From IMG/VR virus record IMGVR_UViG_3300028654_000001, positions 1 to 64,000 of that record: 64,000 nt of DNA. One strand, given 5' to 3'. The notes under the pieces were generated by a model that had not been told where the DNA came from, ran no database searches, and saw nothing but the letters and a program-made list of their open reading frames with translations. A program made the translations under genes and the position numbers. Below, piece after piece: positions 18,032-61,015 of this stretch. Within the stretch, counting starts at the first letter, position 1, and each line of letters starts with the position of its first letter.

Positions 18032-18454
18032 CTAAAGATGCCCATTTTGAAAGAAAAGTAAAAGGGCTCGTCTACCCACCGGGTCTTTCAGGTAGTTCTT
18101 CAGTATCCCTGTTGCTTTATTGTCTGAATCAGAGGCCCTGGTATCTCTAGCCCTAATCTCCCAAGAAAACTCAGGTACGACCTGGATGTCTTCTCCCAGA
18201 GTGCCGCGCCTCTTGATGGTGCCCATGGTCGATGCATGAGCCTCACAACAAGTCTTGCAAGCGAATCCAAATGCAATCCCTACTACATCATCAGCATAAG
18301 TCAGAGTGTGCTCTGGGTTCTCCCGAACGTGACGGTAAGCACTCCTTGCCATTCTCTCGATATCTGAGTAGGGCTCCTTTAGCACGGGCTGGGGAAGTCG
18401 GTTGGGACGTATGTCAGCCCAGAATTCTTCAAGATCCTCAAGGGGCATAGACAC
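18032..18454 (-). CDS. CxxC protein with N-terminal acidic-Trp tag
   Basis: Begins EDLEEFWADIRP; core AYRHVRE..H...DD...FGFACKTC. Confidence 0.75.
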   Translation of the reverse strand: MSMPLEDLEEFWADIRPNRLPQPVLKEPYSDIERMARSAYRHVRENPEHTLTYADDVVGIAFGFACKTCCEAHASTMGTIKRRGTLGEDIQVVPEFSWEIRARDTRASDSDNKATGILKNYLKDPVGRRALLLFFQNGHL

Positions 18455-18716
18455 TCTCCAACTGGGTGCTCTCGGCTATTTGAGCAAAGATGGCGGCATC
18501 CTCGATTGCACAGATTTCCTCCTTGGCCTTCTTGCAGATGGAGTCTACGATACCCCGCTCGGCCATAGCGAAGAGAAGATTCTGGACCAAGAGTGCCCGC
18601 CGGGCCTCCGCCTTGGAGCCCATTTTAACGAGCTCACCGAATTCGTTCTCACGCCAACCCATCAACCTGAGTCTGGCCTTGACAGCTTTTCGGTTATCTC
18701 GATGTTTGCGACCCAT
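18438..18716 (-). CDS. Hypothetical protein
   Basis: CGGTGTA 9 nt upstream of ATG 18716. Confidence 0.6.
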   Translation of the reverse strand: MGRKHRDNRKAVKARLRLMGWRENEFGELVKMGSKAEARRALLVQNLLFAMAERGIVDSICKKAKEEICAIEDAAIFAQIAESTQLESVYAP

Positions 18717-18943
18717 GACCACTAATACACCGGCGGCTCGGAACCAGAGCGGCCCGAAGCCCGAAACACACTGTTACTACAGTGTTCACGTAGGTGTGTT
18801 GTACAGTGTACTAAGCACACAATTAATCAGAACATTCAATGACTGACTGGTCAATCGGATTGTATGGTCAGTAAATGGTTGCCACTGACGGCATTTCTGG
18901 AGTAGTGTGCTGAGAACCAAACCCCTCACGCGTAATATTGAAC

Positions 18944-19264
18944 ATGGCCGCGAGCAAAGCTATTGAAGAGCAAGCAGAACGCTGGGCCAGAAACTACCCT
19001 GACTCGAGAACCCGAATCGAGAAGGCCTTAAACCTCGTTGATGGTTGTACTTACATTGGGGAGGACACTTGGGAGGTCAAAGGATCTTCAGGGACCATCT
19101 ACTTTGTCGGCGCGGATCCAGTCAGAAGGGTCTCCACCTGCACGTGCCCGGATAGCATGAACGGCAACCGGTGTAAGCATCGAATTGCTTGTGCTCTTCT
19201 CTGGGCCACGCGAGGTGCAAATAAGAACTACCCTTTCACCGACGCGAACGGTGTAAGGTACTGA
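18944..19264 (+). CDS. SWIM zinc-finger protein
   Basis: STCTCPD...RCKHRIA. Confidence 0.85.
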   Translation: MAASKAIEEQAERWARNYPDSRTRIEKALNLVDGCTYIGEDTWEVKGSSGTIYFVGADPVRRVSTCTCPDSMNGNRCKHRIACALLWATRGANKNYPFTDANGVRY

Positions 19265-19268
19265 CATC

Positions 19269-19472
19269 ATGCTTCCTAGGCCAGCCCCACCCTCAGAAAC
19301 TCACCAGCTCCTATCAATAATCCGAACCAAAGGTGATAACCTCTGTGCCGATAATTGCACCAACAAGAGGGGTGGTACTTGCACAGCCAGAGAGGTTCCA
19401 GAGAATCTCAGGTTCAATGGTGAGTTCGAACTCCACCACCGAACCAACTTCTGCAAGCTCAACTCACAGTAA
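19269..19472 (+). CDS. Small Cys-rich protein, paralogue of 23748..23978
   Basis: CxxNC...GxCTxR...G[ED]F...RTx[FY]C pattern in both; CGGTGTA upstream. Confidence 0.65.
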   Translation: MLPRPAPPSETHQLLSIIRTKGDNLCADNCTNKRGGTCTAREVPENLRFNGEFELHHRTNFCKLNSQ

Positions 19473-19698
19473 GACTTTCTCACAAGCATAGAGACGAAGC
19501 AACTGGTCGATTGAAGAATCCTGAGTGGTTCCCTATTGACATCTCTGACGTTTTTCGTCAAGAGCTACATCTTCTTTGATTTAGTTGATCCAAGCATCGA
19601 ATTGAATCCGAGATTTTCTGGTGATCTGAGGGGGTCACCGCGATCAAGTTCTTGGGAACTAAACTGGCCAATAGAGTCTCTATGGGCCTGCTTCGGGT

Positions 19699-22167
19699 GT
19701 GACAACTGAACGCTTCGTCAATCAAGCAAGTACAGCTTTGTCCTCATCGGTTGGAGCTGGTGACCTAACCTTCTCAGTCCAGAGTACTACCCATTTTCCG
19801 ACTCAACCTGAGTTCAGGATTCGAATTGGCCAAGAACTCATGTTGGTAACCGGAGTCTCGGGTACCTCTTGGACAGTGACCCGTGGGATCGAAGGGACTA
19901 CCGCGGTTTCACATGCACCAGGTTCGACCGTTGTAGCTGTTCTCACTGGTGGTGGACTCGATGAGATGCGAACGGAGATCGAAGCTGAGAACAAGACTCT
20001 CAACTATGTAGCCATCGATGGTAGTGTAGATGACATGCCAGCATTTACTGCTAAATTAGCTTCAGCAGCAAGTACTGGGTATCGAGTACAACTGAATGCC
20101 GGGAATACAATTCAGTTCAAGACACCCCCTGATGGTAGTGGTACTTATGCTCCACCAAATTCTACTCCAAACCTGAGTAGTGGGGAGTACATGACGTGTG
20201 CTCCAGGTACAAATCTCAGGTTTGACATGACCTATCGCTTCGGGTTGTATGGGAGAGCTAACCTGTCCCCTGGGAGCACCGTTGCTTCTCCTCCTGCAAC
20301 CAGGGCTGCCAACAACAACATAATTATAGTCAACCCCTGGGGTATAACTCCTGCAGTTGGGTACGTTATCTGGGTTGAGCAGTACATGGGAGTTACCCCG
20401 CAAGTGAGCGGGTGTACATATACTATCAAGGAACTTGGTGTTTCCACCATAGGGATCACTGACGTAACGGCCACCACTCTCTATGGGGGTGGCGGGACTC
20501 TCAACGGACTGACCCTCAAGCTCAACATTGATGGGGCTGGAGAGCAGACACTTACGTTATCCGGAGCTGGGAATACAACAACCCTTATCACTCTCATTGC
20601 AGCGATAGTTGTTAAGTGGCCTTCTTTGCTGCAAGTGGGAACTGGTGGTGCATCAGGGAACAACCTACTCATCTCCTCGAAGTCGATTGTGATCGGAGCT
20701 GGTACCGCAAACACAGCTCTAGGTCTCACCGCTGGTGTTCCAACCTATGTTGCTGTTCTGCTCGACCGATCTATTGTGTGGGAGCATTCAATTGGCGACT
20801 CAGTTACCAGTGCCCCCGACTACCCGAAGGACATCTTACTTGACTTCACAGGAGCTAATGTCAGTGGGTACGCAAACCAGCTTATTGAGTTCACGCAGGC
20901 CCAAAGGGCTACAGTCAATGGACTCAACTATCAACTAACGAATGACCAGATCCCGTTCCTCGGTGGGACTGCTACTCTTGCATTTGATGTAGCAAGTCGC
21001 GAATGCACACTATCGAACTCAACGATTGAATTTCCGAATAACCCCTACTACATAGGGAGCAATGGCTTTTACGGTCAGTCAAATGAAGGAACCTTGCTGT
21101 GGAATAATCGAATCCGCAATGCCAGAGCGCAGGGGTACTCCTTCATGGACTGTTATGCCTGCAACGCCATTGGGAACATAACCTCTGACTGTGATTGGGG
21201 TCAAGTTGCACAAGTATTTGTGGATGGTACTTTTGGTTGTTTAGATTGTGCATTCGTTGCATGTGCTGACATTGGAAGTGAAGTAGGGCAGTGGCTTTGG
21301 GGTTCTAAAAGAACAAAAACCCTTGGGTTATCGAGCACTAAGAACCCCCAGTACGGGCTTCTAGTTGATCGCAATAATGAGACCGCAACATTTACAAATT
21401 GCAGCTATACCAAGGCTCCTATTGGTATTTATATCGACGCTACTGCAACTGGAACCTCATTCACCCAGCTGAATACTGACGAGTGTCTTACTGGAATTGT
21501 TATTGCTGGGGCAGCTACCATATCACAGTGGCATCACCACAGCACTCGAACTGATCCTGGTGCAACAGGGGTGTTTGTATCTGGAGTCGGCACTAACATC
21601 ATCCGCGACATAGATCTGAAGATGAGTGGAAGTGGAATCGCGGTTGATGTTGGTACTACGGGTACTCTACTACTGGATGGTGGGAGAATAGAGACGGGAC
21701 CTACAGGTTATTGTTTGCGTGTACAGACAGCAGCTCGTATCAGACTGTCCAACATAACCTTTGCTGGTGGTGTTGGGATCTCTTGCTCAAGTGGTACTAT
21801 TGAGATAGGGCCAAACTGTGACTTTAGTGCTATAACAGAGAATCAACAATTTCTCGTGATTGCCCCGGGTTTGGTTACATTTCAGCAGACCGGTGGGGTT
21901 CTCTCGTATGCTGGCAGCAATCGATTCATACTACTAAGTGAGTGCTACAATACCACCATAGAGATATCGGCCTCAGCCTCAGCGAGTGGTGTTGGCCTAC
22001 CTGGGATACCTGGACTTCAGTTCACGGTAGTAAATAACAACACAAACCCGATGTTCGTTATCTCTAGGGCGGCAGGTGATACCGGAGTTACGATTGCCGG
22101 AGGCAAGACAGCTATTGTTAGGGTAGACTCGACTAACCACTGTAAGCGGGTAACCGCTGATCTATGA
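19699..22167 (+). CDS. Tail fibre / tailspike paralogue 2 with probable parallel beta-helix
   Basis: Shared N-terminal anchor; DGSVDDMPAF start of a pectin-lyase-like region followed by repetitive beta strands. Confidence 0.8.
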   Translation: MTTERFVNQASTALSSSVGAGDLTFSVQSTTHFPTQPEFRIRIGQELMLVTGVSGTSWTVTRGIEGTTAVSHAPGSTVVAVLTGGGLDEMRTEIEAENKTLNYVAIDGSVDDMPAFTAKLASAASTGYRVQLNAGNTIQFKTPPDGSGTYAPPNSTPNLSSGEYMTCAPGTNLRFDMTYRFGLYGRANLSPGSTVASPPATRAANNNIIIVNPWGITPAVGYVIWVEQYMGVTPQVSGCTYTIKELGVSTIGITDVTATTLYGGGGTLNGLTLKLNIDGAGEQTLTLSGAGNTTTLITLIAAIVVKWPSLLQVGTGGASGNNLLISSKSIVIGAGTANTALGLTAGVPTYVAVLLDRSIVWEHSIGDSVTSAPDYPKDILLDFTGANVSGYANQLIEFTQAQRATVNGLNYQLTNDQIPFLGGTATLAFDVASRECTLSNSTIEFPNNPYYIGSNGFYGQSNEGTLLWNNRIRNARAQGYSFMDCYACNAIGNITSDCDWGQVAQVFVDGTFGCLDCAFVACADIGSEVGQWLWGSKRTKTLGLSSTKNPQYGLLVDRNNETATFTNCSYTKAPIGIYIDATATGTSFTQLNTDECLTGIVIAGAATISQWHHHSTRTDPGATGVFVSGVGTNIIRDIDLKMSGSGIAVDVGTTGTLLLDGGRIETGPTGYCLRVQTAARIRLSNITFAGGVGISCSSGTIEIGPNCDFSAITENQQFLVIAPGLVTFQQTGGVLSYAGSNRFILLSECYNTTIEISASASASGVGLPGIPGLQFTVVNNNTNPMFVISRAAGDTGVTIAGGKTAIVRVDSTNHCKRVTADL

Positions 22168-22317: not shown

Positions 22318-23595
22318 CTAAAGATCTACTACCCGACGGATCTGATAGTGTCCACTACTAGAAACCAAAGGATATTCTTGGTTCCGCTCAGAGGATAGAA
22401 CTGATCGGAAAGACTCAAGTTGGTCTCGAGTGAGACCCCCTCCAGACACATAACCCTCAAACACTTCCGCGAAAGCCTCTTCAATGTTGGAGCTAGCGTA
22501 CTCACCCAATGGTGCAACCGGCTTAGGATTACCCTCTTCATCAGTAGGTCCCTGCGGGTAATCCCTGAATCTGTCTGTAGTCTTGGTTTGAACTAAGGCA
22601 TTGAATCGAGCTCGATTCGCTGGGGTCATGAACTTGAACCAGTATCGGTGCCCAAGCTCATGGATCACGATACGGGTAACGAAACCCTCTGGCTTATTCC
22701 TAATATAGACTTGGTCCAGATCGTGGTTATACTCCCCAGCATCCCCAGAACTACTGTAACCCCACTTCTGAGCAAGCTCAATCTCTTCTTGGGTTTTCTT
22801 GTGATTCTTGGCCTCAACAAACATCACCCCGTACCACAACTTTCCGAAACCATTGTTTTTCAACATCTGTTGTGCTCGGTTGATGTACTTGATGTAATCA
22901 CGAACGTCATTCCGACTCACTGAGTCATCAATGACAACAACCTTGGCGCTGTTGAGATCAAATTCCTTAGGAACCGTAGAGTAGAAGTCATCGATTGGAT
23001 CTTCCCCGTGTTCCTTCTTGTACTCAGCGGTAGCCTTGGCATCAGCGTAGAGGTGCTTCATCAAAGCATCGAAGACTCTGGTAGCCGGAGCCCACACCAC
23101 TTCTGGATGCCACCGATACTGATCAACAGCATCCATGGCCTTAGTCCACTTTGCGTGATATGGCTCGTATTCAGGGTATTTGCGAATGAACTCATCAGAT
23201 CCGTGAAGCTTTCGGATGTTGTCCCCAGTTCGCTCTTCGATCTCATCCAGGAACTTCTCGCGCTTCTCACTTACCTCTCTGTAATTACTGGCTATTTTTT
23301 CGTATTCTGTGTACACCTCGAAAACCTGACCTTTGGTCTTTGCCAAAAGGTTCTCGAACTTGATCCGCTCCCTAGAACCGGTGAACACAATGTTCATGCC
23401 ATGCCTTTGGAAGAGTACCTGATCCCCTAGGTTCCTCAGGAACTCAATGAGAGCCTTGTGCTTGTCATCCATCTCATGCGGGGACTTGATGACGGCAGTC
23501 CAGCCCCTCTTGACCCCCATGAGCCATTGCTTGGTCAAGATGTCTGCTTGAATGAAGCGAGCAGCTACTCGGAGAGTTAAGACGTCTTCGCGCAT
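22318..23595 (-). CDS. Zincin (HExxH) metallopeptidase-like protein with N-terminal RVAARF tag
   Basis: IVIHELGHRYW and EYASSNIEEAFAEVF motifs. Confidence 0.8.
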   Translation of the reverse strand: MREDVLTLRVAARFIQADILTKQWLMGVKRGWTAVIKSPHEMDDKHKALIEFLRNLGDQVLFQRHGMNIVFTGSRERIKFENLLAKTKGQVFEVYTEYEKIASNYREVSEKREKFLDEIEERTGDNIRKLHGSDEFIRKYPEYEPYHAKWTKAMDAVDQYRWHPEVVWAPATRVFDALMKHLYADAKATAEYKKEHGEDPIDDFYSTVPKEFDLNSAKVVVIDDSVSRNDVRDYIKYINRAQQMLKNNGFGKLWYGVMFVEAKNHKKTQEEIELAQKWGYSSSGDAGEYNHDLDQVYIRNKPEGFVTRIVIHELGHRYWFKFMTPANRARFNALVQTKTTDRFRDYPQGPTDEEGNPKPVAPLGEYASSNIEEAFAEVFEGYVSGGGLTRDQLESFRSVLSSERNQEYPLVSSSGHYQIRRVVDL

Positions 23596-31993: not shown

Positions 31994-32204
31994 TGAGGAT
32001 CCTCTCAAATCTAGTTGGATGTTCCGTGATATCCCTCTCCAAGCAAACTGAGGCATTTCGAACCAGACGAAGCTTAACTTTATGTCCTCCCGGGTTGATG
32101 TTGGTATACTTTATGAGGTGCCCACGTGAGCACATAGCTTCCCAGTCGCCCACGGTAACATCAGGAGGAGTGGGGCGCCACTTGCAGTTAGAGCAAAAGA
32201 TCAT
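31977..32204 (-). CDS. Cys/His Zn-binding family member with tag
   Basis: CSNC...CSRGH...CLE...PTRFERIL. Confidence 0.75.
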   Translation of the reverse strand: MIFCSNCKWRPTPPDVTVGDWEAMCSRGHLIKYTNINPGGHKVKLRLVRNASVCLERDITEHPTRFERILNAETL

Positions 32205-32607
32205 TCAAAACCCTCTCGAATCTGGTTGGGTGTGTCCCGTTATCATAGTCTGAACAGAAGTCTGAATTCTCGCGAATCAAACTTTTTAGAGGAGCATCAT
32301 AGAAGTAGTCTTGGGCTGCCAATAACTGATGCCCTTTATCACAGGCTAGAGAACGATTTCTGTGGAGTCTTTCAGTCAAAGGCGGCGGGGCCCACTTACA
32401 ATCGGTACAGAGGATCATTCTTGCACCACCCCCTTCAATATCTGGGCAAGGTGCTTGCCCAACAGGGTGTAGCCCAACACCAGAGGAGTTCTTACTAGCC
32501 CAAATTCTATGACGTTTTGCACAATCACCACGCCACTGATCTATATCGTAATCATCTAACCTAGGCCTACATAGAACGTGTTTGCACCCATTACAGATGG
32601 TATACAT
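32188..32607 (-). CDS. Tandem fusion of two Cys/His units with tag
   Basis: MYTICNGC...CAKRH...CPD then MILCTDC...CDKGH...CSD...PTRFERVL; GGTGTA 11 nt before ATG 32607. Confidence 0.75.
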   Translation of the reverse strand: MYTICNGCKHVLCRPRLDDYDIDQWRGDCAKRHRIWASKNSSGVGLHPVGQAPCPDIEGGGARMILCTDCKWAPPPLTERLHRNRSLACDKGHQLLAAQDYFYDAPLKSLIRENSDFCSDYDNGTHPTRFERVLNDLLL

Positions 32608-32688
32608 CAATTTTAGGATACACCAGAACAATGCGAATCGGTGTAACTTACTGATGAACCTGACAATTCAACTAAGAAGTGCAGCCTA

Positions 32689-33177
32689 ATGCCCCCTGAA
32701 GATACCGATAGTATTGAAGAATCTTGGAAGATCTCCCGCCCCGATCGGAACACTGACTACCGTCAAACCGAGGACTCTGCAGAGTCGGAGAAGGTCATGG
32801 ACGAAGAAAGCATGGGCGTCACCAACCTTCTTCCAACCGAACCTTACGAGAGAAGTGTCATCTGGGTTGGTTTTCTATGGCGCGGACAAGAAATCCCTGG
32901 TGGTCGAACTCGAGTTCAGCTTCCAAATCTAACGGTGAGTAACTCAGAGGACCATCCAGAGGGGGAGTTTCAAGTTGAAGGTACCTTCAGACCCCCTCGA
33001 GATTGCTTCATTGACGCTATGAACCTCTACCTATGTGAAATGGGCGGCCCCTCTGTCGACAGGAATCGAAACGCAAACATCGTATTCCAGGTTTCACATG
33101 AGAGGGGGCTTGCATTCTCCTTCATGCTACGTAGAAACATGAGTGCCTCTAACTTAAGAATCTCGGTACTTGGGTAA
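32689..33177 (+). CDS. Hypothetical protein with degenerate N-terminal acidic-Trp tag
   Basis: Begins MPPEDTDSIEESWKISRP. Confidence 0.7.
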   Translation: MPPEDTDSIEESWKISRPDRNTDYRQTEDSAESEKVMDEESMGVTNLLPTEPYERSVIWVGFLWRGQEIPGGRTRVQLPNLTVSNSEDHPEGEFQVEGTFRPPRDCFIDAMNLYLCEMGGPSVDRNRNANIVFQVSHERGLAFSFMLRRNMSASNLRISVLG

Positions 33178-36242: not shown

Positions 36243-36740
36243 TCAGGGAGCAGGGTGAACTACCCTAAATCCTACATTCTCGCTGTAGTAACCGTTTGAT
36301 TCCCCAAACCATCGAACGGTTACCGTACCACGAACCGTAGAAAATCGGTAGAAAGTCCAAGTATAGCTTTCAGGTTGGTAGTCAAGATATGGATCTGGCT
36401 CAGAAGACAGTTCTTCAGCTTCGACTATCGGGTACCCGATTAGATCACTCAAGTCACCAATGATGTCTTCGATCTTCACGCTCTCACAGCAATCCTGCTG
36501 ATGATAGAGCTCGAAGCGAGTCCCATTTGTGGTAACGAACACCAGGGCCTCCTCACCAACACTTCCGATCACCTCCCTCAGGGTGATCCCAACCATGTCG
36601 CTAAGCTCCTCTGGGAGTCGATCTGGAGTTTGAAGATAGGAAGGGAGTTGAGCTCGCGGTGACTGCGGTTCAGATTCAATCTCTCTCTTAGGTCGCAAAC
36701 CCTCCCAGAATGATTCGATGTCGTCCAGGTCATTTGGCAT
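36243..36740 (-). CDS. Common phage domain (HxQDCCESV, DUF7448-like) with N-terminal acidic-Trp tag
   Basis: MPNDLDDIESFWEGLRP, then HQQDCCESVKIEDIIGDL...TWTFY...WFGESNGYYSE. Confidence 0.8.
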   Translation of the reverse strand: MPNDLDDIESFWEGLRPKREIESEPQSPRAQLPSYLQTPDRLPEELSDMVGITLREVIGSVGEEALVFVTTNGTRFELYHQQDCCESVKIEDIIGDLSDLIGYPIVEAEELSSEPDPYLDYQPESYTWTFYRFSTVRGTVTVRWFGESNGYYSENVGFRVVHPAP

Positions 36741-36774
36741 AACCTGACGAGTACACCGAAATCATTATGAGACA

Positions 36775-39139: not shown

Positions 39140-39500
39140 CCTGAAGGATCCTTTCAAATCGAGTTGGATACAGGGTCTCAGCCTCTTCCTCGCGCTCAAC
39201 AAAACCTGGACGGCAGTAGGATAACTGAAGGAAGCCACCCTCTGGCGTAGTATATATGATCTTCCAATCATACAAGTTAAGGTGATCTATATTTACAATC
39301 CACTCAAGGCAGTACTTCATCAGGAAGTAGGGATCTTCTCTGACCCAAGCCAACCTAGGCCACTTAACAACGGCGCTCGTAAGCTCATTCTTCAGAGCAT
39401 GAACGAACTCAGAGATCCCAGCCCCAAGCCCGTTAACCTTGAATAGAGGGTGACCCGAATCGTCTTCCGAGACTGCTACGAGAAGTTCCTTGTAACTCAC
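39123..39500 (-). CDS. Hypothetical protein with C-terminal tag
   Basis: Ends LYPTRFERILQGEIIV. Confidence 0.7.
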   Translation of the reverse strand: MSYKELLVAVSEDDSGHPLFKVNGLGAGISEFVHALKNELTSAVVKWPRLAWVREDPYFLMKYCLEWIVNIDHLNLYDWKIIYTTPEGGFLQLSYCRPGFVEREEEAETLYPTRFERILQGEIIV

Positions 39501-39745
39501 AGGACAACCCCACTCAAGATCCTATCAAACCTCGTGGGCCTAATATCTAGTTTGTCACCACAAATCTCGCTGTGGGTCATGCTGAGCACCCTTGGAACCT
39601 CTTGTGTTGCCTTATCGGGAATCCATATGTAGAACACATAATGCCCCTTGCAACAGGGGGCATACCCGGAGTAGTAAGTTGGGTCATCCTCCACGTGAAA
39701 CTTATGTGAACAATCCATGCAGTTGGTCAGAGCCATAGGCATCAC
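39497..39745 (-). CDS. Cys/His Zn-binding family member with tag
   Basis: CMDC...CCKGH...CGD...PTRFDRIL. Confidence 0.75.
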   Translation of the reverse strand: MMPMALTNCMDCSHKFHVEDDPTYYSGYAPCCKGHYVFYIWIPDKATQEVPRVLSMTHSEICGDKLDIRPTRFDRILSGVVL

Positions 39746-39795: not shown

Positions 39796-40284
39796 ATGGC
39801 CGACGAGATCGAAGACTACTGGGAGGGGATTAGGCCCCAGAGACCAAATGACACCGTTCCAGCTCCGAAGATCGAGGAGTATCAAGAGCCATTTAGTTAC
39901 ACCCATGAAGACTTAGGAATTGGGCTCCGAGCTATTAGTCGTCTTCGAACGGAGTTGTCAACACGAGAAGATGCGGAACAGTTAGAAAGAACCCTGCGTC
40001 TGGGCCTTGGAATACCCGATAGTATCCCCTCTCTGACCCCCCTCAACTCTCTTCAATCTTGGATGGACACTTCTGAAGTCAGAGCGGCGCTTGGTCTACA
40101 ACAGTCACAGAATCAAGCCATAACGAACCTCATTAGGGCTTTCGAAGCCCTAGGGTATCGCTGTGAAGCGTCATTTAGCAACTTCAGGCTCTACGTGGCC
40201 CTACCTGCCATCACCCCAGATAATTGGTCAGCTCATCAATTAACTGAGGGTGGGGTTCAGTTGATCTTGAATTTACCAAGATAG
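39796..40284 (+). CDS. N-tagged protein with ALGYxCE domain
   Basis: MADEIEDYWEGIRP; CGGTGTA 10 nt upstream of ATG 39796. Confidence 0.75.
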   Translation: MADEIEDYWEGIRPQRPNDTVPAPKIEEYQEPFSYTHEDLGIGLRAISRLRTELSTREDAEQLERTLRLGLGIPDSIPSLTPLNSLQSWMDTSEVRAALGLQQSQNQAITNLIRAFEALGYRCEASFSNFRLYVALPAITPDNWSAHQLTEGGVQLILNLPR

Positions 40285-42242: not shown

Positions 42243-42716
42243 TTAATCCTCTGGGAATTCCACTACAATTCCCACTCCACCGTTCTGGGTAACCCGAGTT
42301 CCAATCCTGAAGTGGGGCAGTTCATTGGGGACTGGCTCTATAAGGAACCACACTGCTCGGTTCCCATTTGAGAGTCGCTCTTGTCCAACAGAGCCGGTGA
42401 TCCCAAGAGCCGCAAGAGATGACATGAGACGGTTGAGAGGGCTGTTTCCATTAGGCTCTTCCCTATTACTAAGACCATCCATGTAGGCGTGATTTCTAAT
42501 CCTCTGCTCCCTCGTAGATAGGGGTTCGAACTCAGCCCAAGTGTCAGGAGGCCTCCTCCGAAGAGAGCTGATCGTTCTGAGCCCAGTATCTGGATTATGC
42601 TGGTCAATGAGCCCATGCGGCGGACCAGGTCTCTCAGCAGGCTCAGTAGGGGACCTGGGAGACTCTCTACGAGGTCTGATCCCTTCCCAATAGGAGTCAA
42701 TGTCATCGTCAGGCAT
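42243..42716 (-). CDS. N-tagged hypothetical protein
   Basis: Begins MPDDDIDSYWEGIRP. Confidence 0.75.
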   Translation of the reverse strand: MPDDDIDSYWEGIRPRRESPRSPTEPAERPGPPHGLIDQHNPDTGLRTISSLRRRPPDTWAEFEPLSTREQRIRNHAYMDGLSNREEPNGNSPLNRLMSSLAALGITGSVGQERLSNGNRAVWFLIEPVPNELPHFRIGTRVTQNGGVGIVVEFPED

Positions 42717-43248
42717 GACGATTCCTAATGGTTAGGCGGAGCTCACCACCCACGCAAGGAGAGGCCCAGCTTGGTTCAGTGAGCCCATGGAACTGTATGC
42801 ACAGATTCTCCTCTTCAGTGACCCAGGTCTCGCACGAGTAACCCAGTGTCTGAAGGGCCAGCTGGAGATCCCGCAAGGGGACAGCGTCCTCAAGGTTGTG
42901 AAATGACTGTGGGTTTCTGTTATTTAGGATTCCATCTGCCAAAGCATGACCACCCTCGATGGAGTCAAGATCTGGAACGTGCATAGCACGAAAGTCATCG
43001 TAGGTCTGCTGATTCATGATCAGAGGCCTAACTGCAGGATGGGACTGGAATGCCTCCGAGGAGCGAAAAGTTCGTGCGGTTCTGGCGGTAGAGGCCGGGT
43101 AGAGGCCGAGCTCTTGAGCCCTCCTGAACTGTTCTTCTATTGTGGTTGGACTGACATCGTCCCCACTCAAGATCACCTCGAGAGGTTCACTAACCTCTCT
43201 ACGAGGTCGGCTCACATCCCAATAGGATTCGATGTCTTCAGCCATCAC
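42709..43248 (-). CDS. N-tagged protein with LGYxCE domain
   Basis: MAEDIESYWDVSRP...LQTLGYSCE. Confidence 0.75.
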   Translation of the reverse strand: MMAEDIESYWDVSRPRREVSEPLEVILSGDDVSPTTIEEQFRRAQELGLYPASTARTARTFRSSEAFQSHPAVRPLIMNQQTYDDFRAMHVPDLDSIEGGHALADGILNNRNPQSFHNLEDAVPLRDLQLALQTLGYSCETWVTEEENLCIQFHGLTEPSWASPCVGGELRLTIRNRHA

Positions 43249-48706: not shown

Positions 48707-48707
48707 G

Positions 48708-52410: not shown

Positions 52411-53152
52411 ATTGAGAGCAGACAGGGCAACTCGAATCCCTCGTTACGGGTAGTTCCTGGAACCTCATTTCTAAAGCATTGAAAACTAAGAGCCTTCCTA
52501 CCAAAGGCTCCCCAATCTCGAGGGTGACTTTGAGAGCCTCTGTCGCTTGAAGCATCCCGATGGTGCCAGGCACAACCCCAAGGACGCCTCCGGGGCGGTT
52601 GGGCTTATCCACAGCCACGGACACGTTTGGGTACAGACATTGGTAGCAGGGCCCCTTGCCACGAACAAGGGTCGTCACCTGCCCCTCGAAGCTGGACACA
52701 CTCCCATGAATCAACGGAATCTTGTAGTACATGCAGGCTCGATTCAGAAGATACCGAGTCCTCGCGTTATCACAACAATCCACGACAATATCCCACCCAT
52801 AGGTGAAAATTTCCTCAATATTATCACAGGTTAGCCTCTGAGGTAGGGAGATGACCCTCACATCAGAGTTCAGTTGAGTGATGACTTTCTCGGCACTCTG
52901 GGTCTTGAGGAGCCCAACCTTAGAATGGATAACCTGCCTCTGAAGATTCGACAAGGATACCTTGTCATTATCCAAAATCCCAAGGGTACCGAACCCGGCT
53001 GCAGCCAGGTAGAGAGCCACCGGAGAACCTAACCCTCCCAACCCAACAATCAGGGCTCGACTTTCAAAGAGCCTAGCCTGCCCCTCCTCCCCAACTTCTG
53101 GTAGAAGGAAGTGCCTCCCATACCGTTCTCTATGGTCATCGCTAATGATCAT
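52397..53152 (-). CDS. MoeB/ThiF-family E1-like adenylyltransferase
   Basis: RYGRH, VGLGGLG, DNDKVSLSNLQRQ, CYQCL and CPVC motifs. Confidence 0.92.
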   Translation of the reverse strand: MIISDDHRERYGRHFLLPEVGEEGQARLFESRALIVGLGGLGSPVALYLAAAGFGTLGILDNDKVSLSNLQRQVIHSKVGLLKTQSAEKVITQLNSDVRVISLPQRLTCDNIEEIFTYGWDIVVDCCDNARTRYLLNRACMYYKIPLIHGSVSSFEGQVTTLVRGKGPCYQCLYPNVSVAVDKPNRPGGVLGVVPGTIGMLQATEALKVTLEIGEPLVGRLLVFNALEMRFQELPVTRDSSCPVCSQCVSD

Positions 53153-53391
53153 AGAACATACCCAGCAGCGTGAAACAGCCTATTAATCATGGCTCTTCCC
53201 TCTGGGGTAACCTCAACCCGCTTCCAAGGTCCACCTTCGTCAGTGATCTTAACCCACCCGACAGCTGCTAACCTATCATAGATGTCACCGGGGTCATCTG
53301 AAGAACCACTCTTGTAATCGAGGTGGCCGGGATCCATCCTATCTAGGTTAAACAAGACTGGCAAGTCTTCTACGAACTCTTCTCGATTCAT
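53149..53391 (-). CDS. Hypothetical protein (winged-helix-like)
   Basis: LAAVGWV...VEVTPEGR; ATGA-coupled to the MoeB-like gene. Confidence 0.55.
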   Translation of the reverse strand: MNREEFVEDLPVLFNLDRMDPGHLDYKSGSSDDPGDIYDRLAAVGWVKITDEGGPWKRVEVTPEGRAMINRLFHAAGYVL

Positions 53392-53547: not shown

Positions 53548-54411
53548 ATGGCCGACAATGAGGACATCGAATCCTACTGGGAAGGACTTCGCCCACCTCG
53601 AGAGCCTGACCCTCCAATGACTGAGGAGCGGAGGCGAGCCATTATGGCGGGCCGCCAACTTGCCCGAACTCAATACTCCGAAGATGAGTTCAATGCCCTC
53701 TTCCGGGACTACGTTGATCCAGGCCGCGGACAATCAACTCTGACCATTGAAGAGCAACAGCAGCTTGAAAGGCACTCGATTCTTAGTTCCCCAGAGGCGT
53801 TGTCCCAAGAGGTGCTTGGTGAGAGTGCTCTCCGGATCCAACGAGAGGTTGAGCATCGACGTGAAAGGGGCCTCTCCCCCATTCCACTCGCTGTGGACGG
53901 GTATTCAATTCAACCGCATGAAACACTTGAACAATTCGCCAACAGAGCTCACCTAGTCTATGAGGTAGATCCTGACGAGGACCCTGATGAATTACGTACC
54001 CGAGCCTGGGAGGATACTCACGTACTCAACTCCCCCTTTGGCACTATGACCAGTGAGCAAATCCAGTTCGTTCAGTGGCTCTTTCAACACTGGGAGGGTA
54101 TGACGGAACCACAGCAAAACTGGTTCCAAGATCAGGTCACCTTAGCTCGAGGGAACCAATCTATCGATCTAACAGCACTGGGGATTGGAACCGAAGTCCA
54201 CAGACGGATTGAAAACTCGGTCAGTAGAGCTATCCAAGGGTATGTAGGGCAACCCAGCGATAGAACTCAACTAAGGCATACCGTTGAAAGAGCTGTGATG
54301 GAAGATCCCGAGTTGTTCAATAACCGAAGAATAGTAAGGGAAGCCTTTGAGCGAATGGCGGATCAAATAGATCTTGGGGAAGCCATTATGGCGGGCCTTC
54401 CCAGAAGATGA
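53548..54411 (+). CDS. N-tagged hypothetical protein
   Basis: Begins MADNEDIESYWEGLRP. Confidence 0.75.
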   Translation: MADNEDIESYWEGLRPPREPDPPMTEERRRAIMAGRQLARTQYSEDEFNALFRDYVDPGRGQSTLTIEEQQQLERHSILSSPEALSQEVLGESALRIQREVEHRRERGLSPIPLAVDGYSIQPHETLEQFANRAHLVYEVDPDEDPDELRTRAWEDTHVLNSPFGTMTSEQIQFVQWLFQHWEGMTEPQQNWFQDQVTLARGNQSIDLTALGIGTEVHRRIENSVSRAIQGYVGQPSDRTQLRHTVERAVMEDPELFNNRRIVREAFERMADQIDLGEAIMAGLPRR

Positions 54412-58703: not shown

Positions 58704-59107
58704 TGGAACTCTCAACTCAACCTATTATTAGCACTTGCCTCAGTCACCTACCCAAGGACATCTGGGAAGCTCGCCTTAGTTTGTTCAGTAATTCTTTGGC
58801 TCATGAGTGTGTGGAGCGCCGCGGGTGTCAGTGGTTCATCAGTACGTCTTTTGTGGACTACTCAAATGCCTACCCTAGTGAGGAGCTTGCTTTTGAGGCT
58901 CTTAAGGAGATCATTAGCACTGAGTCACGCATCAGGGCTCTAAAAAACATCAAGGACCTTGCCAGGGCGTCCACTGTCAGTGTTCTCACCAAACGACTAC
59001 CAAACATGACTACAGCTCCCTGTCCACCACCCTGGAAAGAGGAATCCGATCTCAACCCAAAACTCCACAACCTATGGAACTTATACTTCAATGGAATCGG
59101 AAAATAG
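58700..59107 (+). CDS. Hypothetical protein
   Basis: ATGA overlap with the previous stop. Confidence 0.55.
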   Translation: MMELSTQPIISTCLSHLPKDIWEARLSLFSNSLAHECVERRGCQWFISTSFVDYSNAYPSEELAFEALKEIISTESRIRALKNIKDLARASTVSVLTKRLPNMTTAPCPPPWKEESDLNPKLHNLWNLYFNGIGK

Positions 59108-59109
59108 AC

Positions 59110-59295
59110 ATGGACAAGAACACTAAAGACCGGAGTGAGTTAGGATACCTATTAGCTGGGGACTTCATCCTCAACAGCAAAGGGCAAGCTTCTTGGAAAA
59201 CTAACTACCCAGTACTGAAGGAGATCAGAGAGGAGGCGCGTAGGCTAGGGTCATCCCGAATCTTCTACGACTCGATAACTGTCACGATGGCCTAA
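59110..59295 (+). CDS. Hypothetical protein
   Basis: ATG immediately after the previous stop. Confidence 0.5.
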   Translation: MDKNTKDRSELGYLLAGDFILNSKGQASWKTNYPVLKEIREEARRLGSSRIFYDSITVTMA

Positions 59296-59325
59296 GTGAA
59301 CTTCCTTTGATAGCCCTGAGTAGAC

Positions 59326-60663
59326 ATGGTCACCGACATTGTCATAACCCATCGGGTTGCTGAAAGATTCATCCAAGCTTCCTCCCCAATAGTGGTCAAG
59401 GAAGTGCAGGACAGGATTGAAGTTTCGGGACCTTACGACAAGATGAAGGACTTGATCCCGTACTTGAGGGGTAAGTTTGAGTATCGCGGCCAGGATCATA
59501 CTTGGTGGACACCAAGTACCAAGATGACCAACCTTAAGATGAAGAACCTTAAGAAGAAGGTTGATGAGGTCAATGGGAAGTTTGGTCCTGACCCTGTGAA
59601 GGTAGAGGAGTCCGCGGAAGCTAAGGCGGAAAGGCTTGAGGAAGCTAAGAAACTTCTCAGCAAAGCTGTTCACATGCGGGTGCCCGGACTCACCTTCAGT
59701 CCTATCGGGGTCGATGGAGCTCAGTTGACAGGGGCTCTCACTGACTTGAGGGTGGATATTAACAAGTCTGGCGGGAATTACGGACCTGAGTTCTCAAAGT
59801 TTCAAGCTCACCTAATCAAGCCGACGGAATTCGAAAATCTTTTGGAGGCGGTCGCGGATCAAGGGCGGCTTGTGGCCAAAGCCCAAGCTGACTTATCTAG
59901 CCTACTTCCACGCAAGTTCCCGAGTTTGAAGATTGATGTTGGAACCAACAATGGGAGTTACCTGCTAATAGTCTCAGGGAAAACCTACGACTTCAAGGAT
60001 GAAATCAAGAAGCGAGTACCAGTGACCTTCAATGGTCAGGGGAGCTTCTGGTGGGCTCCAATCCATCAAGTAAAGGAGGCTCAAGTAAAGGAATTAATTG
60101 AGTATCTTGAGGGTGAGGAACGGAAACTAGCCGAGAAGTGGAAGGCGGATCGGGAGCCAGCAGTTGAGAGAAAGAGGCCTAACCAAAGGGGTGAACATTG
60201 CATTAATTGTGGTGGTTGGGTAGACGCTGGTGAGGGTTATCTAGTCAACCACTACGATTCTGAAGAGGGTGACTTTGTTTGGAAGGTCAAGCACAAGGAT
60301 CCAGATGACTGCGCTAGGATTCGAAATGAGGTGAAGATTCGAAGTGAGGCAGCTAGGACTAAAGGCCAAGCTCGAAGGAACCTCATGCTCATGTGTGAGA
60401 AGTCCGAGTACTATGTGCAGGGTACTGGCCTCAAACCGCCTGGGGAGCAAGTCTGGATTGACAAGCATTCGCTTGGGTACGGCGGTGGGACCTGGGTAGT
60501 CATTGAACCCGGTGAGAGTTACTTCTGGTACGTCAACAACAATGGTGCCGACGGTGATGATTGGTCACGCAATAACGTCACTACGGGCGGAGCTGGTGCC
60601 ATTGGGTATCGACTCCCCTATACGGATGAAGCCAAAGTCTTGATTGAAGTGGCCAAAGAGTGA
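59326..60663 (+). CDS. Multi-domain protein with N-terminal RVAERF tag
   Basis: THRVAERFIQAS; two VSGxxYDxKD..W repeats; CINCG...H...C zinc site. Confidence 0.75.
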   Translation: MVTDIVITHRVAERFIQASSPIVVKEVQDRIEVSGPYDKMKDLIPYLRGKFEYRGQDHTWWTPSTKMTNLKMKNLKKKVDEVNGKFGPDPVKVEESAEAKAERLEEAKKLLSKAVHMRVPGLTFSPIGVDGAQLTGALTDLRVDINKSGGNYGPEFSKFQAHLIKPTEFENLLEAVADQGRLVAKAQADLSSLLPRKFPSLKIDVGTNNGSYLLIVSGKTYDFKDEIKKRVPVTFNGQGSFWWAPIHQVKEAQVKELIEYLEGEERKLAEKWKADREPAVERKRPNQRGEHCINCGGWVDAGEGYLVNHYDSEEGDFVWKVKHKDPDDCARIRNEVKIRSEAARTKGQARRNLMLMCEKSEYYVQGTGLKPPGEQVWIDKHSLGYGGGTWVVIEPGESYFWYVNNNGADGDDWSRNNVTTGGAGAIGYRLPYTDEAKVLIEVAKE

Positions 60664-60670
60664 GCCCTGC

Positions 60671-61015
60671 TCACTCCCAGTGTACCCCATCTGGGCTCTC
60701 AATTCGAGAAACAGTCAACCTCCCGCACTTACCACAGGGTACAGGCTCAACCTCGACCCCCTCTCGAACCGAGGTTAGGGGTATGTCGGGTACGGGTACC
60801 AATTCGTCAGTCAAGGTCACCGATCCTACACTATTCCGTTCCAAGTGACGAACATGGTGTTTGTTGAGGAGCAACCTTGATAGTTGTACACTAAGGCTAT
60901 TAGGTTGGAATGGGGTTGGAATGGTTGACCAATTAGGAGCAACCTTTGGTTTCTCCGGCTTCCATCCAGGACGAATGGTTTCCCAGTATCCTTCTAGATC
61001 GTATGTATCAGCCAT
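60671..61015 (-). CDS. N-tagged hypothetical protein
   Basis: Begins MADTYDLEGYWETIRP. Confidence 0.7.
   Translation of the reverse strand: MADTYDLEGYWETIRPGWKPEKPKVAPNWSTIPTPFQPNSLSVQLSRLLLNKHHVRHLERNSVGSVTLTDELVPVPDIPLTSVREGVEVEPVPCGKCGRLTVSRIESPDGVHWE

What the first reader, a model, noticed from the sequence alone, without database searches (positions are those of the whole stretch)
18032..61015. A second, N-terminal acidic-Trp tag (DIESYWEGLRP) on 8 different proteins
Seen, within the first ~20 aa: DLEEFWADIRP (18454-), DSIEESWKISRP (32689+), DIESFWEGLRP (36740-), EIEDYWEGIRP (39796+), DIDSYWEGIRP (42716-), DIESYWDVSRP (43248-), DIESYWEGLRP (53548+) and DLEGYWETIRP (61015-). Each is followed by a Pro/Glu-rich linker and then a different body, including a common phage HxQDCCESV domain. 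Codons differ synonymously (TAC TGG GAG GGG ATT AGG CCC; TAC TGG GAA GGA CTT CGC CCA; TAT TGG GAA GGG ATC AGA CCT). No ORF has both terminal tags. Inference: a second, orthogonal docking peptide of the acidic-aromatic type that typically binds a basic/hydrophobic groove.
Basis: partly seen in the sequence, partly recalled or inferred. Interest (0 to 1): 0.85.

Follow-up and report, generated by a model that had tools for sequence, protein, structure and literature searches.

The report
N-terminal docking tag on lysine-free phage proteins
A 512-kb uncultured soil phage and its relatives put the same short acidic tryptophan peptide at the very start of dozens of otherwise unrelated proteins that have been almost stripped of lysine, which looks like a new address label whose receptor is still unknown.

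Summary
Eight ORFs in the window start with M-(A/P)-acidic-D-I-E-S-(Y/F)-W-E-G-(L/I)-R-P-x-R-E, 2-9 residues after the Met. The DNA pattern gives 5 hits where 0.00 are expected.

The window is part of a 512,571-bp IMG/VR phage contig with at least 17 such ORFs. A profile search of 1.84 billion proteins finds 77 clusters. About 65 match from residue 1, 8 more carry the tag behind an over-long gene call, 2 are false and 2 are tag-body duplications.

The tag is selected as a peptide: the invariant Arg uses all six codons. It is modular. Profile similarity between bodies ends after 20-26 residues, and 110 of the 120 best DUF7448 homologues lack tag and linker. AlphaFold2 gives a short helix, a low-confidence linker, then the fold.

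New findings:
- Tagged bodies are purged of lysine (0.7% against 5.4%; a 287-aa protein has none) and of cysteine, while lysine is tolerated in the linker.
- Tag genes sit beside arrays of genes carrying a C-terminal PTRFERIL tag, often divergently 44-58 nt apart.
- About half of the tagged proteins share a C-terminal alpha/beta domain.

Best reading: a docking or targeting peptide that leads to lysine-directed chemistry. The closest analogue is the T4 capsid-targeting sequence. The receptor is unknown.

The parts
18404..18448 (-). Tag-coding segment (MPLEDLEEFWADIRP) of ORF 18032-18448. This is the variant 'DLE' class; the body is not lysine-poor (K 4.3%).
32689..32742 (+). Tag-coding segment (MPPEDTDSIEESWKISRP, degenerate) of ORF 32689-33177. 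Body K 1.2%. A C-tag gene, 32188-32631, lies divergently 57 nt upstream.
36690..36740 (-). Tag-coding segment (MPNDLDDIESFWEGLRP) of ORF 36243-36740: tag, then a roughly 30-aa linker, then the DUF7448 domain (residues 53-156).
39796..39837 (+). Tag-coding segment (MADEIEDYWEGIRP) of ORF 39796-40284. It has 1 Lys in 162 aa and the C-terminal alpha+4-beta domain. A C-tag gene, 39497-39745, lies divergently 50 nt upstream.
42672..42716 (-). Tag-coding segment (MPDDDIDSYWEGIRP) of ORF 42243-42716. It has 0 Lys in 157 aa and the shared C-terminal domain.
43204..43245 (-). Tag-coding segment (MAEDIESYWDVSRP) of ORF 42709-43245. It has 0 Lys and the shared C-terminal domain, and lies in tandem with 42243-42716.
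53548..53595 (+). Tag-coding segment (MADNEDIESYWEGLRP) of ORF 53548-54411. It has 0 Lys in 287 aa and 10.8% Arg.
60968..61015 (-). Tag-coding segment (MADTYDLEGYWETIRP) of ORF 60671-61015. This is the variant 'DLE' class; K 4.4%.
17533..18024 (-). C-terminal-tag gene (ends ...VPTRFERKDVI) directly downstream of the N-tag gene 18032-18448, on the same strand with an 8-nt gap. It is one of at least 17 PTRFERIL-type ORFs in the window.
39497..39745 (-). C-terminal-tag gene (small Cys-rich protein, ends ...RPTRFDRILSGVVL) divergent from the N-tag gene 39796-40284.
32188..32631 (-). C-terminal-tag gene (ends ...HPTRFERVLNDLLL) divergent from the N-tag gene 32689-33177.
36752..36757 (-). Promoter-like hexamer GGTGTA, 17 nt upstream of the ATG of the tagged DUF7448 gene. 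The same motif lies at 39780-39785 (+), 16 nt before ATG 39796, and before many untagged genes.

Best explanation
The motif is a modular N-terminal docking or targeting peptide of one clade of huge, uncultured phages.

Shown:
- It is translated and selected as a peptide.
- It sits 2-9 residues after Met1. The second residue is A, P, T, S, G, V or C in 107 of 117, so Met removal is likely.
- It is predicted to form one short acidic amphipathic helix (I, Y/F, W, L/I on one face), capped by R-P.
- It is tethered by a Pro/Glu/Arg/Lys-rich, low-confidence linker to bodies that fall into about 23 clusters without detectable mutual similarity.
- One body is a Pfam domain (DUF7448) whose hundreds of other homologues lack the tag.
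- The bodies of the canonical class are purged of lysine about 7-fold and of cysteine about 2.6-fold, while lysine is tolerated within about 20 residues after the tag.

Inferred:
- The helix docks all these proteins onto one common receptor. The receptor is probably phage-encoded, because the motif is virtually absent from 185,579 bacterial and archaeal genomes.
- That receptor, or the place it leads to, exposes the docked protein to lysine- or amine-directed chemistry, either cleavage or conjugation. Only lysine-free cargo persists unharmed there.

Favoured concrete version (about 0.3): a cargo-targeting signal in the manner of the T4 capsid-targeting sequence or of microcompartment encapsulation peptides. 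The tag takes a diversified set of accessory proteins into a phage-built assembly, most likely the prohead, so that they are co-injected. A processing enzyme can cut in the lysine-bearing linker and release the lysine-free cargo.

The C-terminal PTRFERIL tag belongs to the same system, either as a second class of clients or as a partner.
For: - Reality and N-terminal position: (77 clusters among 1.84e9 proteins; about 65 match from residue 1 and 8 more carry the tag behind an over-long gene call).
- Peptide-level selection.
- Modularity: 23-24 body clusters; profile similarity ends after 20-26 residues; 10 tagged against 110 untagged DUF7448 homologues, the untagged ones starting about 40 residues later.
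- Helix, linker, then fold.
- Clade restriction: (huge-phage contigs of 145-512 kb), and (a single hit in genome contigs, which is a phage-like 6.6-kb scaffold).
- Lysine purge, overall: K 1.16% against 5.40% in the window; median 0.93% against 5.12%, p=6e-12.
- Lysine purge, by position: (23 of 86 have no Lys; 56 of 86 have none beyond +20; K per 10-aa bin 0.3, 6.9, 4.9, 1.7, 0.7...).
- Lysine purge is in frame only.
- Lysine purge within DUF7448: (tagged 0.51% against untagged 3.46% K, p=1e-9).
- Lysine purge across body families: (16 of 23 body clusters at or below 2% K). One search shows the cysteine depletion.
- Coupling to the C-tag.
Against: - No receptor was identified.
- There are no expression or virion-proteome data; no RNA run was listed.
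- The genes lie in arrays of small ORFan genes that look like accessory or early regions, not in a recognisable head module.
- No T4-type (L/I)xE cleavage motif follows the tag.
- Linker lysines have no fixed position, and 37% of tagged proteins have no linker lysine, so 'cleavage at a linker Lys' cannot be general.
- T4 internal proteins contact the packaged DNA through their lysines (PMC3012670), the opposite of these acidic, lysine-free proteins.
- 7 of 23 body clusters, mostly with variant tags (DLExxW, SIESYWEVVRP), are not lysine-poor, so the tag may serve more than one purpose.
- The amphipathicity is only moderate: muH 0.51, and 10% of shuffles do as well.
Confidence: 0.55

Rival explanations
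1. The tag is a handle of a lysine- or amine-directed protein-conjugation system (ubiquitin-like, or a sortase/transglutaminase-like ligase). It docks on the conjugating enzyme. The only primary amines of the client (the alpha-amine and the linker lysines) lie next to the tag, so modification is site-specific. Alternatively, the tagged proteins are 'lysine-desert' adaptors that deliver targets while escaping self-modification, as with F-box or SOCS-type receptors. C-tag proteins could be the donors.
For: - Primary amines are confined to the tag-proximal 30 residues or so in 56 of 86 proteins, and 23 of 86 have only the alpha-amine.
- Lysine and cysteine, the two strong nucleophiles, are both depleted.
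- A ThiF/E1-like gene (52397-53152, E=1.3e-72) lies divergently next to the lysine-free tagged gene 53548.
- C-tag genes are adjacent and co-occur. Many C-tag proteins are 70-80 aa with a conserved C-terminal motif followed by a variable acidic tail.
- Lysine deserts are linked in the literature to escape from lysine-directed tagging, including a hypothesis for Mycobacterium phages (PMC13696103).
Against: - No E2, Ubl, DUB or ligase was recognised.
- The ThiF adjacency is not conserved in relatives.
- The C-tag motif has no Gly-Gly-type end, and the small C-tag proteins look like Cys-rich zinc ribbons, not beta-grasp folds.
- There is no direct evidence of any conjugate.
Confidence: 0.15
2. 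The tag docks the proteins on a host hub (RNA polymerase, sliding clamp, ribosome, chaperone or protease) for host takeover, like other viral short linear motifs. The receptor is host-encoded and the lysine bias has an unrelated cause.
For: - The genes lie in arrays of small accessory genes with a shared promoter-like motif.
- Some long members carry HTH-like repeats: PF18780 in 4 of 31 and Sigma70_r3 in 3 of 31.
- The I-x-x-(Y/F)-W core resembles, from memory only, PIP-box or LIR-type and p53/MDM2-type acidic-aromatic motifs.
Against: - A scan of one genome per species (185,579 species) for the DNA pattern found no bacterial protein with the motif, so there is no host ligand being mimicked.
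- This reading does not explain the tag-linked, position-dependent lysine purge.
- The host is unknown.
Confidence: 0.2
3. The N-terminal tag and the C-terminal PTRFERIL tag bind each other: an acidic helix against a basic amphipathic helix. N-tag and C-tag proteins encoded side by side would then form heterodimers.
For: - 16 of 58 N-tag genes have a divergent C-tag gene within 250 nt upstream (typically 44-58 nt), and 28 of 58 have one within 1 kb.
- The two tags occur in the same contigs.
- Their charges are complementary, and the C-tag has a high helical hydrophobic moment: TRFERIL muH 0.87.
Against: - The numbers are unequal, with at least 17 C-tag against 8 N-tag ORFs in the window, and long arrays contain only one kind.
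- One protein has both tags.
- No structural test was possible, because only single-chain prediction is available.
- This reading does not explain the lysine depletion.
Confidence: 0.1
4. The tag is a degron: an N-terminal recognition signal for a protease (host ClpXP/ClpAP/Lon or a phage protease) that times the removal of these proteins.
For: - Its position is strictly terminal, and a terminal tag of the opposite end exists too; ClpX is known, from memory, to read both N- and C-terminal signals.
- An unstructured linker next to the tag would serve as an initiation site.
Against: - Bacterial AAA+ proteases need no lysine, so the lysine purge is unexplained, unless the system is Pup-like, in which case lysine loss would oppose degradation.
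- There is no similarity to known degrons, and no data.
Confidence: 0.07
5. The tag is a translational element rather than a protein signal: a nascent-peptide arrest or regulatory sequence (a W ... R-P pattern, as in TnaC or SecM), or a 5' coding element of leaderless mRNAs.
For: - A promoter-like GGTGTA lies only 15-19 nt before the ATG, and there is no Shine-Dalgarno sequence, which suggests leaderless or near-leaderless mRNAs.
- W, R and P are the invariant residues.
Against: - The same upstream motif precedes many genes without the tag.
- The codons vary freely, so no RNA element is conserved.
- The acidic and hydrophobic helix residues are conserved too.
- An arrest peptide would not explain the linker or the lysine-free bodies.
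Confidence: 0.04
6. There is no separate function: the motif is only the conserved N-terminus of one fast-evolving paralogous family.
For: - About half of the tagged proteins do form one family with a shared C-terminal domain and a hypervariable middle.
- Tandem arrays of tagged paralogues exist.
Against: - DUF7448 is an independent Pfam family that acquired the tag.
- Similarity to four other window bodies ends with the tag.
- The 11-mer is far better conserved than anything after it, despite saturated synonymous change.
Confidence: 0.04

Closest known systems
T4 capsid targeting sequence (CTS) of the T-even internal proteins
   Same: It is a short N-terminal peptide and the only thing shared by a highly diverse, fast-evolving set of small phage proteins. 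It is a transferable address label (PMC3012670).
   Different: - There is no sequence similarity, and PHROGs gave no hit for the tagged proteins.
- No (L/I)xE protease site follows the tag.
- A Pro/Glu linker is present here.
- The clients here are acidic and lysine-free, whereas T4 internal proteins contact the packaged DNA through lysines.
- Packaging is not shown here.
Encapsulation peptides of bacterial microcompartments (and encapsulin cargo-loading peptides)
   Same: A short amphipathic helix at the N- or C-terminus is joined by a poorly conserved, disordered linker to unrelated cargo, and both termini are used within one system (PMC4594438, PMC12339742).
   Different: - No shell gene was recognised in the window.
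- The tag is strongly acidic with an invariant Trp and Arg-Pro.
- The context is a phage genome.
- No lysine purge is known for microcompartment cargo (my knowledge).
Lysine deserts of ubiquitin-system receptors, AB-toxin A chains and Mycobacterium-phage proteins
   Same: Long lysine-free stretches with Lys replaced by Arg, interpreted as protection from lysine-directed tagging or degradation (PMC13696103).
   Different: - Here the bias is gene-specific inside a 49% GC genome, so it is not a GC effect.
- It is tied to one N-terminal peptide.
- It is position-dependent: the linker is exempt.
- The lysine-directed activity is unidentified.
Acidic-aromatic short linear motifs: LIR/AIM [W/F/Y]xx[L/I/V] with upstream acidic residues, the PIP box, the p53 FxxxWxxL helix (recalled from memory, leads only)
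   Same: W-x-x-(L/I/V) is preceded by acidic residues (W in 58 of 58, L/I/V at +3 in 55 of 58), and the helix is short and amphipathic.
   Different: Those receptors (Atg8, PCNA, MDM2) are eukaryotic or archaeal, none was found here, and the resemblance could be chance.
Pfam DUF7448 (PF24240), body of ORF 36243-36740 only
   Same: Residues 53-156 match the family (E=2.3e-25), and the AlphaFold2 model has pLDDT above 90.
   Different: Members outside this clade have no tag or linker (110 of the best 120) and about 7 times more lysine.

Membership tests
T4-type capsid targeting sequence | One short N-terminal peptide shared by otherwise unrelated small phage proteins | tested here: met
   There are 8 ORFs in the window and about 23 body clusters overall. 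Profile similarity ends after the tag.
T4-type capsid targeting sequence | Sequence relatedness to the T-even internal-protein N-terminus or family | tested here: not met
   PHROGs scan of 10 tagged proteins found 0 families. tblastn of the 53548 protein against 50,697 phage records found no match.
T4-type capsid targeting sequence | A prohead-protease cleavage site directly after the tag ((L/I)xE in T4) | tested here: not met
   The consensus after the tag is R-P-x-R-E-P-E-P, with no conserved (L/I)xE. A protease of another specificity cannot be excluded.
T4-type capsid targeting sequence | Clients are found inside proheads or virions and the tag suffices for packaging | not testable with these tools
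   The phage is uncultured and there are no proteomes. No RNA run was listed.
Microcompartment or encapsulin cargo peptides | A terminal amphipathic helix plus a flexible linker on unrelated cargo | tested here: met
   AlphaFold2 gives a helix at residues 5-15 or 6-10 (pLDDT about 70-78), a linker at pLDDT 47-67 and a fold at pLDDT 85-98.
Microcompartment or encapsulin cargo peptides | A cognate shell protein (BMC-H/T/P or encapsulin) encoded with the cargo | tested here: inconclusive
   No such Pfam family appeared among about 40 window and locus proteins scanned, or in precomputed neighbour annotations. Most of the 512-kb genome was not seen.
Lysine-desert proteins linked to lysine-directed tagging | A long, continuous lysine-free region not explained by base composition | tested here: met
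   The median longest K-free run is 89% of protein length, and 50 proteins have runs of 150 aa or more. The genome is 49% GC, and untagged neighbours have 5.4% K. The depletion is in frame only.
Lysine-desert proteins linked to lysine-directed tagging | A lysine-directed conjugation or degradation machinery acting on or with them | tested here: inconclusive
   A ThiF/E1-like gene lies next to 53548, but the adjacency is not conserved. No E2, Ubl or DUB was recognised.
Pfam DUF7448 (ORF 36243-36740 only) | Match to PF24240 above the gathering score | tested here: met
   89.5 bits against a cut-off of 27. 508 homologues were found at E<=1e-5; the 120 best listed all carry PF24240.
Ribosome-arrest peptides (SecM or TnaC type) | A conserved W ... 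R-x-x-P nascent peptide that regulates a downstream gene or its own translation | not testable with these tools
   Only a loose resemblance (W, R-P). The tag heads long ORFs rather than leader peptides, and the same promoter-like context occurs on untagged genes.

The most novel reading that the evidence does not exclude
The two terminal tags are the handles of a phage-encoded, amine-directed protein-processing system that has not been described. The N-tag docks clients whose only primary amines lie beside the tag. A phage enzyme then either ligates a C-tag protein (or another modifier) to that site, or uses the lysine-free clients as self-protected adaptors to mark or destroy host proteins. 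This would be a ubiquitin- or sortase-like logic invented by huge phages.
Probability: 0.13. Interest if true: 0.93.

Novelty: new variant of a known kind. Interest (0 to 1): 0.74.

Why it matters
Huge phages carry hundreds of ORFan genes with no handle on their function. A shared address label sorts at least 17 genes of this 512-kb genome, and about 75 protein clusters in public data, into one pathway. A second label (PTRFERIL) sorts dozens more.

The tag-linked purge of lysine is a rare, quantitative clue about what happens to these proteins. It makes the question testable with a peptide pull-down, virion or N-terminal proteomics, or lysine add-back.

If the tag is a packaging or compartment signal, it would be the first sequence-defined one outside the T-even phages, and a ready-made tool for loading cargo. 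If it feeds a conjugation system, it would be a new kind of phage biochemistry.

Tried and rejected
- **Cultured relatives.** megablast of 9 kb of the window against 50,697 phage records gave no match. tblastn of the 53548 protein gave none.
- **Body function.** Pfam and PHROGs on tagged bodies gave nothing but DUF7448, plus weak HTH-like repeats and a sub-threshold collagen hit. A profile against PDB sequences gave nothing below E=0.07.
- **Structure search.** Foldseek of both AlphaFold2 models against PDB gave no hit with E<=0.001.
- **ESM Atlas.** Scores were 0.65 or lower. The first query listed flagellar-secreted, crAss-cargo and T7-gp15 clusters, but the second query did not repeat them, so I treat this as noise.
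- **Expression.** No RNA run was listed. Laying DNA contigs of 4 rhizosphere runs showed only that the sequence is identical in all four and that the 45-nt tag segments cross-match paralogues.
- **Ubiquitin-like link through the neighbouring ThiF gene.** The adjacency is absent in two relatives.
- **Neighbourhood look-ups for a conserved partner gene.** Only ORFans were found.
- **Cluster names.** All were 'hypothetical protein'.
- **A late-promoter comparison with the two tail-fibre genes.** No shared motif was found.
- **Literature strings.** TRFERIL, ESYWEG and DUF7448 each gave 0 papers.
- **Codon or tRNA-Lys explanation of the lysine bias.** Rejected, because 63% of tagged proteins keep Lys codons in the linker. 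A nucleotide-level explanation is rejected because out-of-frame AAA/AAG are not depleted.

Full report
**1. Observation.**

Six-frame translation finds the motif at the eight stated places, each 3-7 residues after an ATG and each in an ORF of 114-287 codons. A degenerate DNA pattern for [DE]x[DE]x[FY]W[DE]xxRP hits the window 5 times against 0.00 expected from shuffles.

Some starts need correcting. The 39748 ORF begins at ATG 39796, the 18032 ORF at ATG 18448 and the 42709 ORF at ATG 43245. The copy at 32689 is degenerate.

**2. Source and spread.**

The window is part of IMGVR_UViG_3300028654_000001 (= Ga0265322_10000002), a 512,571-bp viral contig. It has no close relative among 50,697 deposited phage genomes. 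The window carries tail-fibre-like genes, DNA methyltransferases and many ORFans. The same DNA is present, without a single difference, in contigs of at least four rhizosphere metagenome runs.

- Pattern scans recover the tag in other huge-phage contigs of 145, 229, 235, 350 and 407 kb, and in many short metagenome contigs, nearly always right after a start codon. The few mid-ORF hits look like chance.
- The 512-kb genome has at least 17 tagged ORFs: 8 in the window and 9 outside.
- A scan of one genome for each of 185,579 bacterial and archaeal species found one hit only. It is a 6.6-kb scaffold binned with a Candidatus Omnitrophota MAG that carries both tag types and looks like a fragment of a related phage.
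- A profile of the first 34 residues (58 sequences) against 1.84 billion representative proteins gives 77 proteins at E<=0.001. Of these, about 65 match from residue 1 and 8 more carry the tag behind an over-long gene call. Two are false positives (FN3 repeats; a repeat protein). Two are tag-body duplications within one ORF.

**3. It is a peptide, and it is modular.**

Selection acts on the peptide:
- Across 58 distinct tag DNAs, W and R are invariant while R uses all six codons and P all four.
- At identical residues only 42% of codons are identical.

The similarity ends with the tag:
- BLAST clustering of the bodies gives 23-24 clusters.
- hhalign of the largest family against four other window proteins aligns only residues 1-20/26.

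The cleanest case is ORF 36243-36740:
- Residues 53-156 are Pfam DUF7448.
- In 160 cultured phages the homologous ORF matches only from about residue 45 of the query onward.
- Of the 120 best of 508 database homologues, 10 carry tag plus linker and 110 do not. The untagged ones start about 40 residues later.

AlphaFold2 places a short helix on the tag (residues 5-15, pLDDT 71-78). A linker follows at pLDDT 59-67, then the domain at pLDDT above 90. The 39796 protein gives the same picture: helix at 6-10, residues 27-36 below 50, and a C-terminal domain at 85-92.

**4. Qualification on 'different bodies'.**

About half of all tagged proteins, including 39796, 42243 and 42709, form one family. 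It has the tag, a hypervariable and mostly helical middle of very different lengths, and a shared C-terminal domain of about 55 aa (one helix plus four strands). Some long members carry HTH-like repeats (PF18780 in 4 of 31). The domain has no detectable relative in the PDB.

**5. New: the clients are purged of lysine.**

Overall depletion:
- In the window, tagged ORFs have 1.16% Lys and 8.8% Arg. C-tag ORFs have 3.8% Lys and all other ORFs 5.4% Lys.
- 42243 and 42709 have no lysine and 39796 has one.
- 53548 has no lysine in 287 residues; the chance of that at 5.2% K is about 2e-7.
- Over all fetched loci the median is 0.93% against 5.12% (Mann-Whitney p=6e-12). Most of the remaining lysine-poor 'untagged' ORFs turned out to carry variant tags such as EVESYWDHR.

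Position and cause:
- Of 86 tagged proteins of at least 100 aa, 23 have no lysine at all and 56 have none beyond 20 residues after the tag.
- Lysine per 10-residue bin from the tag start runs 0.3, 6.9, 4.9, 1.7, 0.7, 0.5.... The linker is exempt and the body is not.
- The depletion is in frame only, so it is not a nucleotide effect. Linker Lys codons are common, so it is not tRNA-Lys avoidance.
- Cysteine is also depleted (0.39x), while Arg, Gln and Glu are enriched.

Independence across families:
- Within DUF7448, tagged members have 0.51% Lys in the domain against 3.46% in 32 untagged homologues (p=1e-9). The tagged ones form one clade, so this is a single evolutionary event.
- Independence comes from the other families: 16 of 23 body clusters have at most 2% Lys.
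- The exceptions mostly carry variant tags (DLExxW as in 18032 and 60671, and SIESYWEVVRP).

**6. Link to the second tag and gene organisation.**

At least 17 window ORFs end in (R/Y)-P-T-R-F-E-R-I-L followed by a short acidic tail. Most are 70-120-aa Cys-rich proteins, and a few are larger and unrelated.

- A DNA scan for this tag hits the same viral contigs.
- Of 58 distinct N-tag genes with enough upstream sequence, 16 have a divergent C-tag gene within 250 nt (typically 44-58 nt).
- Another 15 follow an N-tag gene in tandem, and 28 have a C-tag gene within 1 kb.
- In the window the pairs are 32631/32689, 39745/39796 and 18024/18032.

A promoter-like GGTGTA lies 15-19 nt before the ATG of tagged genes and of many untagged ones. 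It often occurs back to back (TACACC-N9-10-GGTGTA), and no Shine-Dalgarno sequence is visible. This fits leaderless or near-leaderless mRNAs. Its fixed spacing supports the annotated ATG, and so translation of the tag.

**7. Mechanism.**

Shown: a translated, modular, N-terminal acidic amphipathic helix on a flexible tether. It is restricted to one phage clade, attached to many unrelated lysine- and cysteine-poor bodies, and genomically coupled to a C-terminal tag family.

Inferred: the helix docks all clients on one receptor. The receptor is probably phage-encoded, since no bacterial protein carries the motif. The position-dependent lysine purge means that the docked clients meet lysine- or amine-directed chemistry.

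I put about 0.55-0.6 on this general statement. My favoured concrete form, at about 0.3, is a cargo-targeting signal like the T4 capsid-targeting sequence. There, too, a short N-terminal peptide is the only thing shared by a diverse set of proteins that are then processed in the prohead (PMC3012670). The helix-plus-linker architecture is that of encapsulation peptides (PMC4594438, PMC12339742).

Against the prohead version:
- The genomic context is accessory-gene-like.
- There is no T4-type cleavage motif.
- 37% of tagged proteins have no linker lysine.
- The composition is the opposite of T4 internal proteins, which contact the packaged DNA through lysines.

Rivals:
- a conjugation handle or lysine-desert adaptor (0.15);
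- a host hub (0.2);
- direct N-tag/C-tag pairing (0.1);
- a degron (0.07);
- a translational element (0.04);
- a family relic (0.04).

**8. Known or new.**

The motif strings and DUF7448 occur in none of about 8.4 million searched papers. All database names are 'hypothetical protein'.

The kind of thing, a terminal address peptide on phage or organelle cargo, is known. This tag is not: its sequence, its clade, its pairing with a C-terminal tag, and above all its association with lysine-free clients. I therefore file it as a new variant of a known kind, with a 0.13 chance that it marks a new amine-directed processing system.

**9. Limits.**

No receptor, expression data or proteome is available. 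Only about 15% of the 512-kb genome was seen. Body clusters rest on BLAST and hhalign, so very remote homology between ORFan bodies cannot be excluded. Resemblances to LIR, PIP, p53, Pup, SecM and TnaC motifs are recalled from memory and were not tested.

Noticed in passing
window 10102-46257, for example 17533-18024(-), 29554-30003(+), 30004-31411(+, five in a row), 31977-32631(-), 34456-35018(+), 38927-39745(-), 44965-46257(-): There is a C-terminal tag (R/Y)-P-T-R-F-E-R-I-L followed by a short acidic tail on at least 17 ORFs. Most are 70-120-aa Cys-rich (CxxC ... C-x-[KR]-G-H ... C) proteins, and a few have larger unrelated bodies. It co-occurs with the N-tag in the same contigs.
   Followed up: partly
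window, for example 1390-1395(-)/1410-1415(+), 6036-6041(-)/6056-6061(+), 32619-32624(-)/32640-32645(+), 35025(+), 36757(-), 39780(+), 56658(-): A promoter-like hexamer GGTGTA lies 15-19 nt upstream of the ATG of many genes. It is often arranged back to back (TACACC-N9-10-GGTGTA) in divergent intergenic regions only 43-58 nt long, with no Shine-Dalgarno sequence. This suggests leaderless or near-leaderless transcripts.
   Followed up: partly
window 3484-4545(+), 22318-23595(-), 59326-60663(+): A third shared N-terminus, (I/L)-x-(L/H)-R-V-A-x-R-(F/Y)-(I/R)-x-A within the first 20 residues, occurs on three large ORFs (353, 425 and 445 aa) with no Pfam family.
   Followed up: no
window 52397-53152(-): A ThiF/MoeB-type E1-like adenylyltransferase (PF00899, E=1.3e-72) is flanked by two small ORFs of unknown function (52177-52410, 53149-53391) and lies divergent from the lysine-free tagged gene 53548. 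The adjacency is not conserved in two relatives.
   Followed up: partly
window 46741-50285(-): The phage encodes ABC-transporter parts: an ATPase (46741-47553), a BPD-type permease (47557-48459), and a 525-aa fusion of an NMT1/phosphonate-type substrate-binding domain with an OmpA-family C-terminal domain (48708-50285; also PHROG 25518).
   Followed up: no
window 3-261: A 42-bp tandem repeat (4.4-5.8 copies) reads on the minus strand as collagen-like Gly-X-Y triplets at the edge of the window. Collagen-like stretches also occur in some tagged proteins elsewhere (L002:12338-13000, P0054).
   Followed up: no
window 13138-14634(+) and 19699-22167(+): Two tail-fibre-like genes have homologous N-termini (PHROGs 1101/8469; the second has a beta-helix). 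They bracket a methyltransferase, a C-tag gene and an N-tag gene on the other strand. All three fibre-region ORFs are also lysine-poor (1.3-1.8%), but with low charge overall.
   Followed up: no
P0004 (L071:385-597), P0002, P0005: P0004 (70 aa) carries both the N-tag and a C-tag (...KTRFEREDVI) and looks like a recombinant of a 53548-type N-terminus with a C-tag end. P0002 (260 aa) is a tandem duplication of tag plus body in one ORF, so it holds an internal tag copy. P0005 has two tag copies 24 residues apart.
   Followed up: partly
L025 = JBAYMG010000046.1 (6,610 bp): A scaffold binned in a Candidatus Omnitrophota MAG from a landfill-type sample holds four C-tag genes divergent from two N-tag genes and no cellular marker. 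It is either a mis-binned phage fragment or a hint at the host.
   Followed up: partly
window 4473-5765(-), 16661-17533(-), 41063-41647(+): 4473-5765 is a DNA methyltransferase (PF01555, E=1.7e-22). 16661-17533 looks like a second one by its N-terminal DPPF motif, read by eye only. 41063-41647 is a DUF7007 protein (E=1.8e-34).
   Followed up: no
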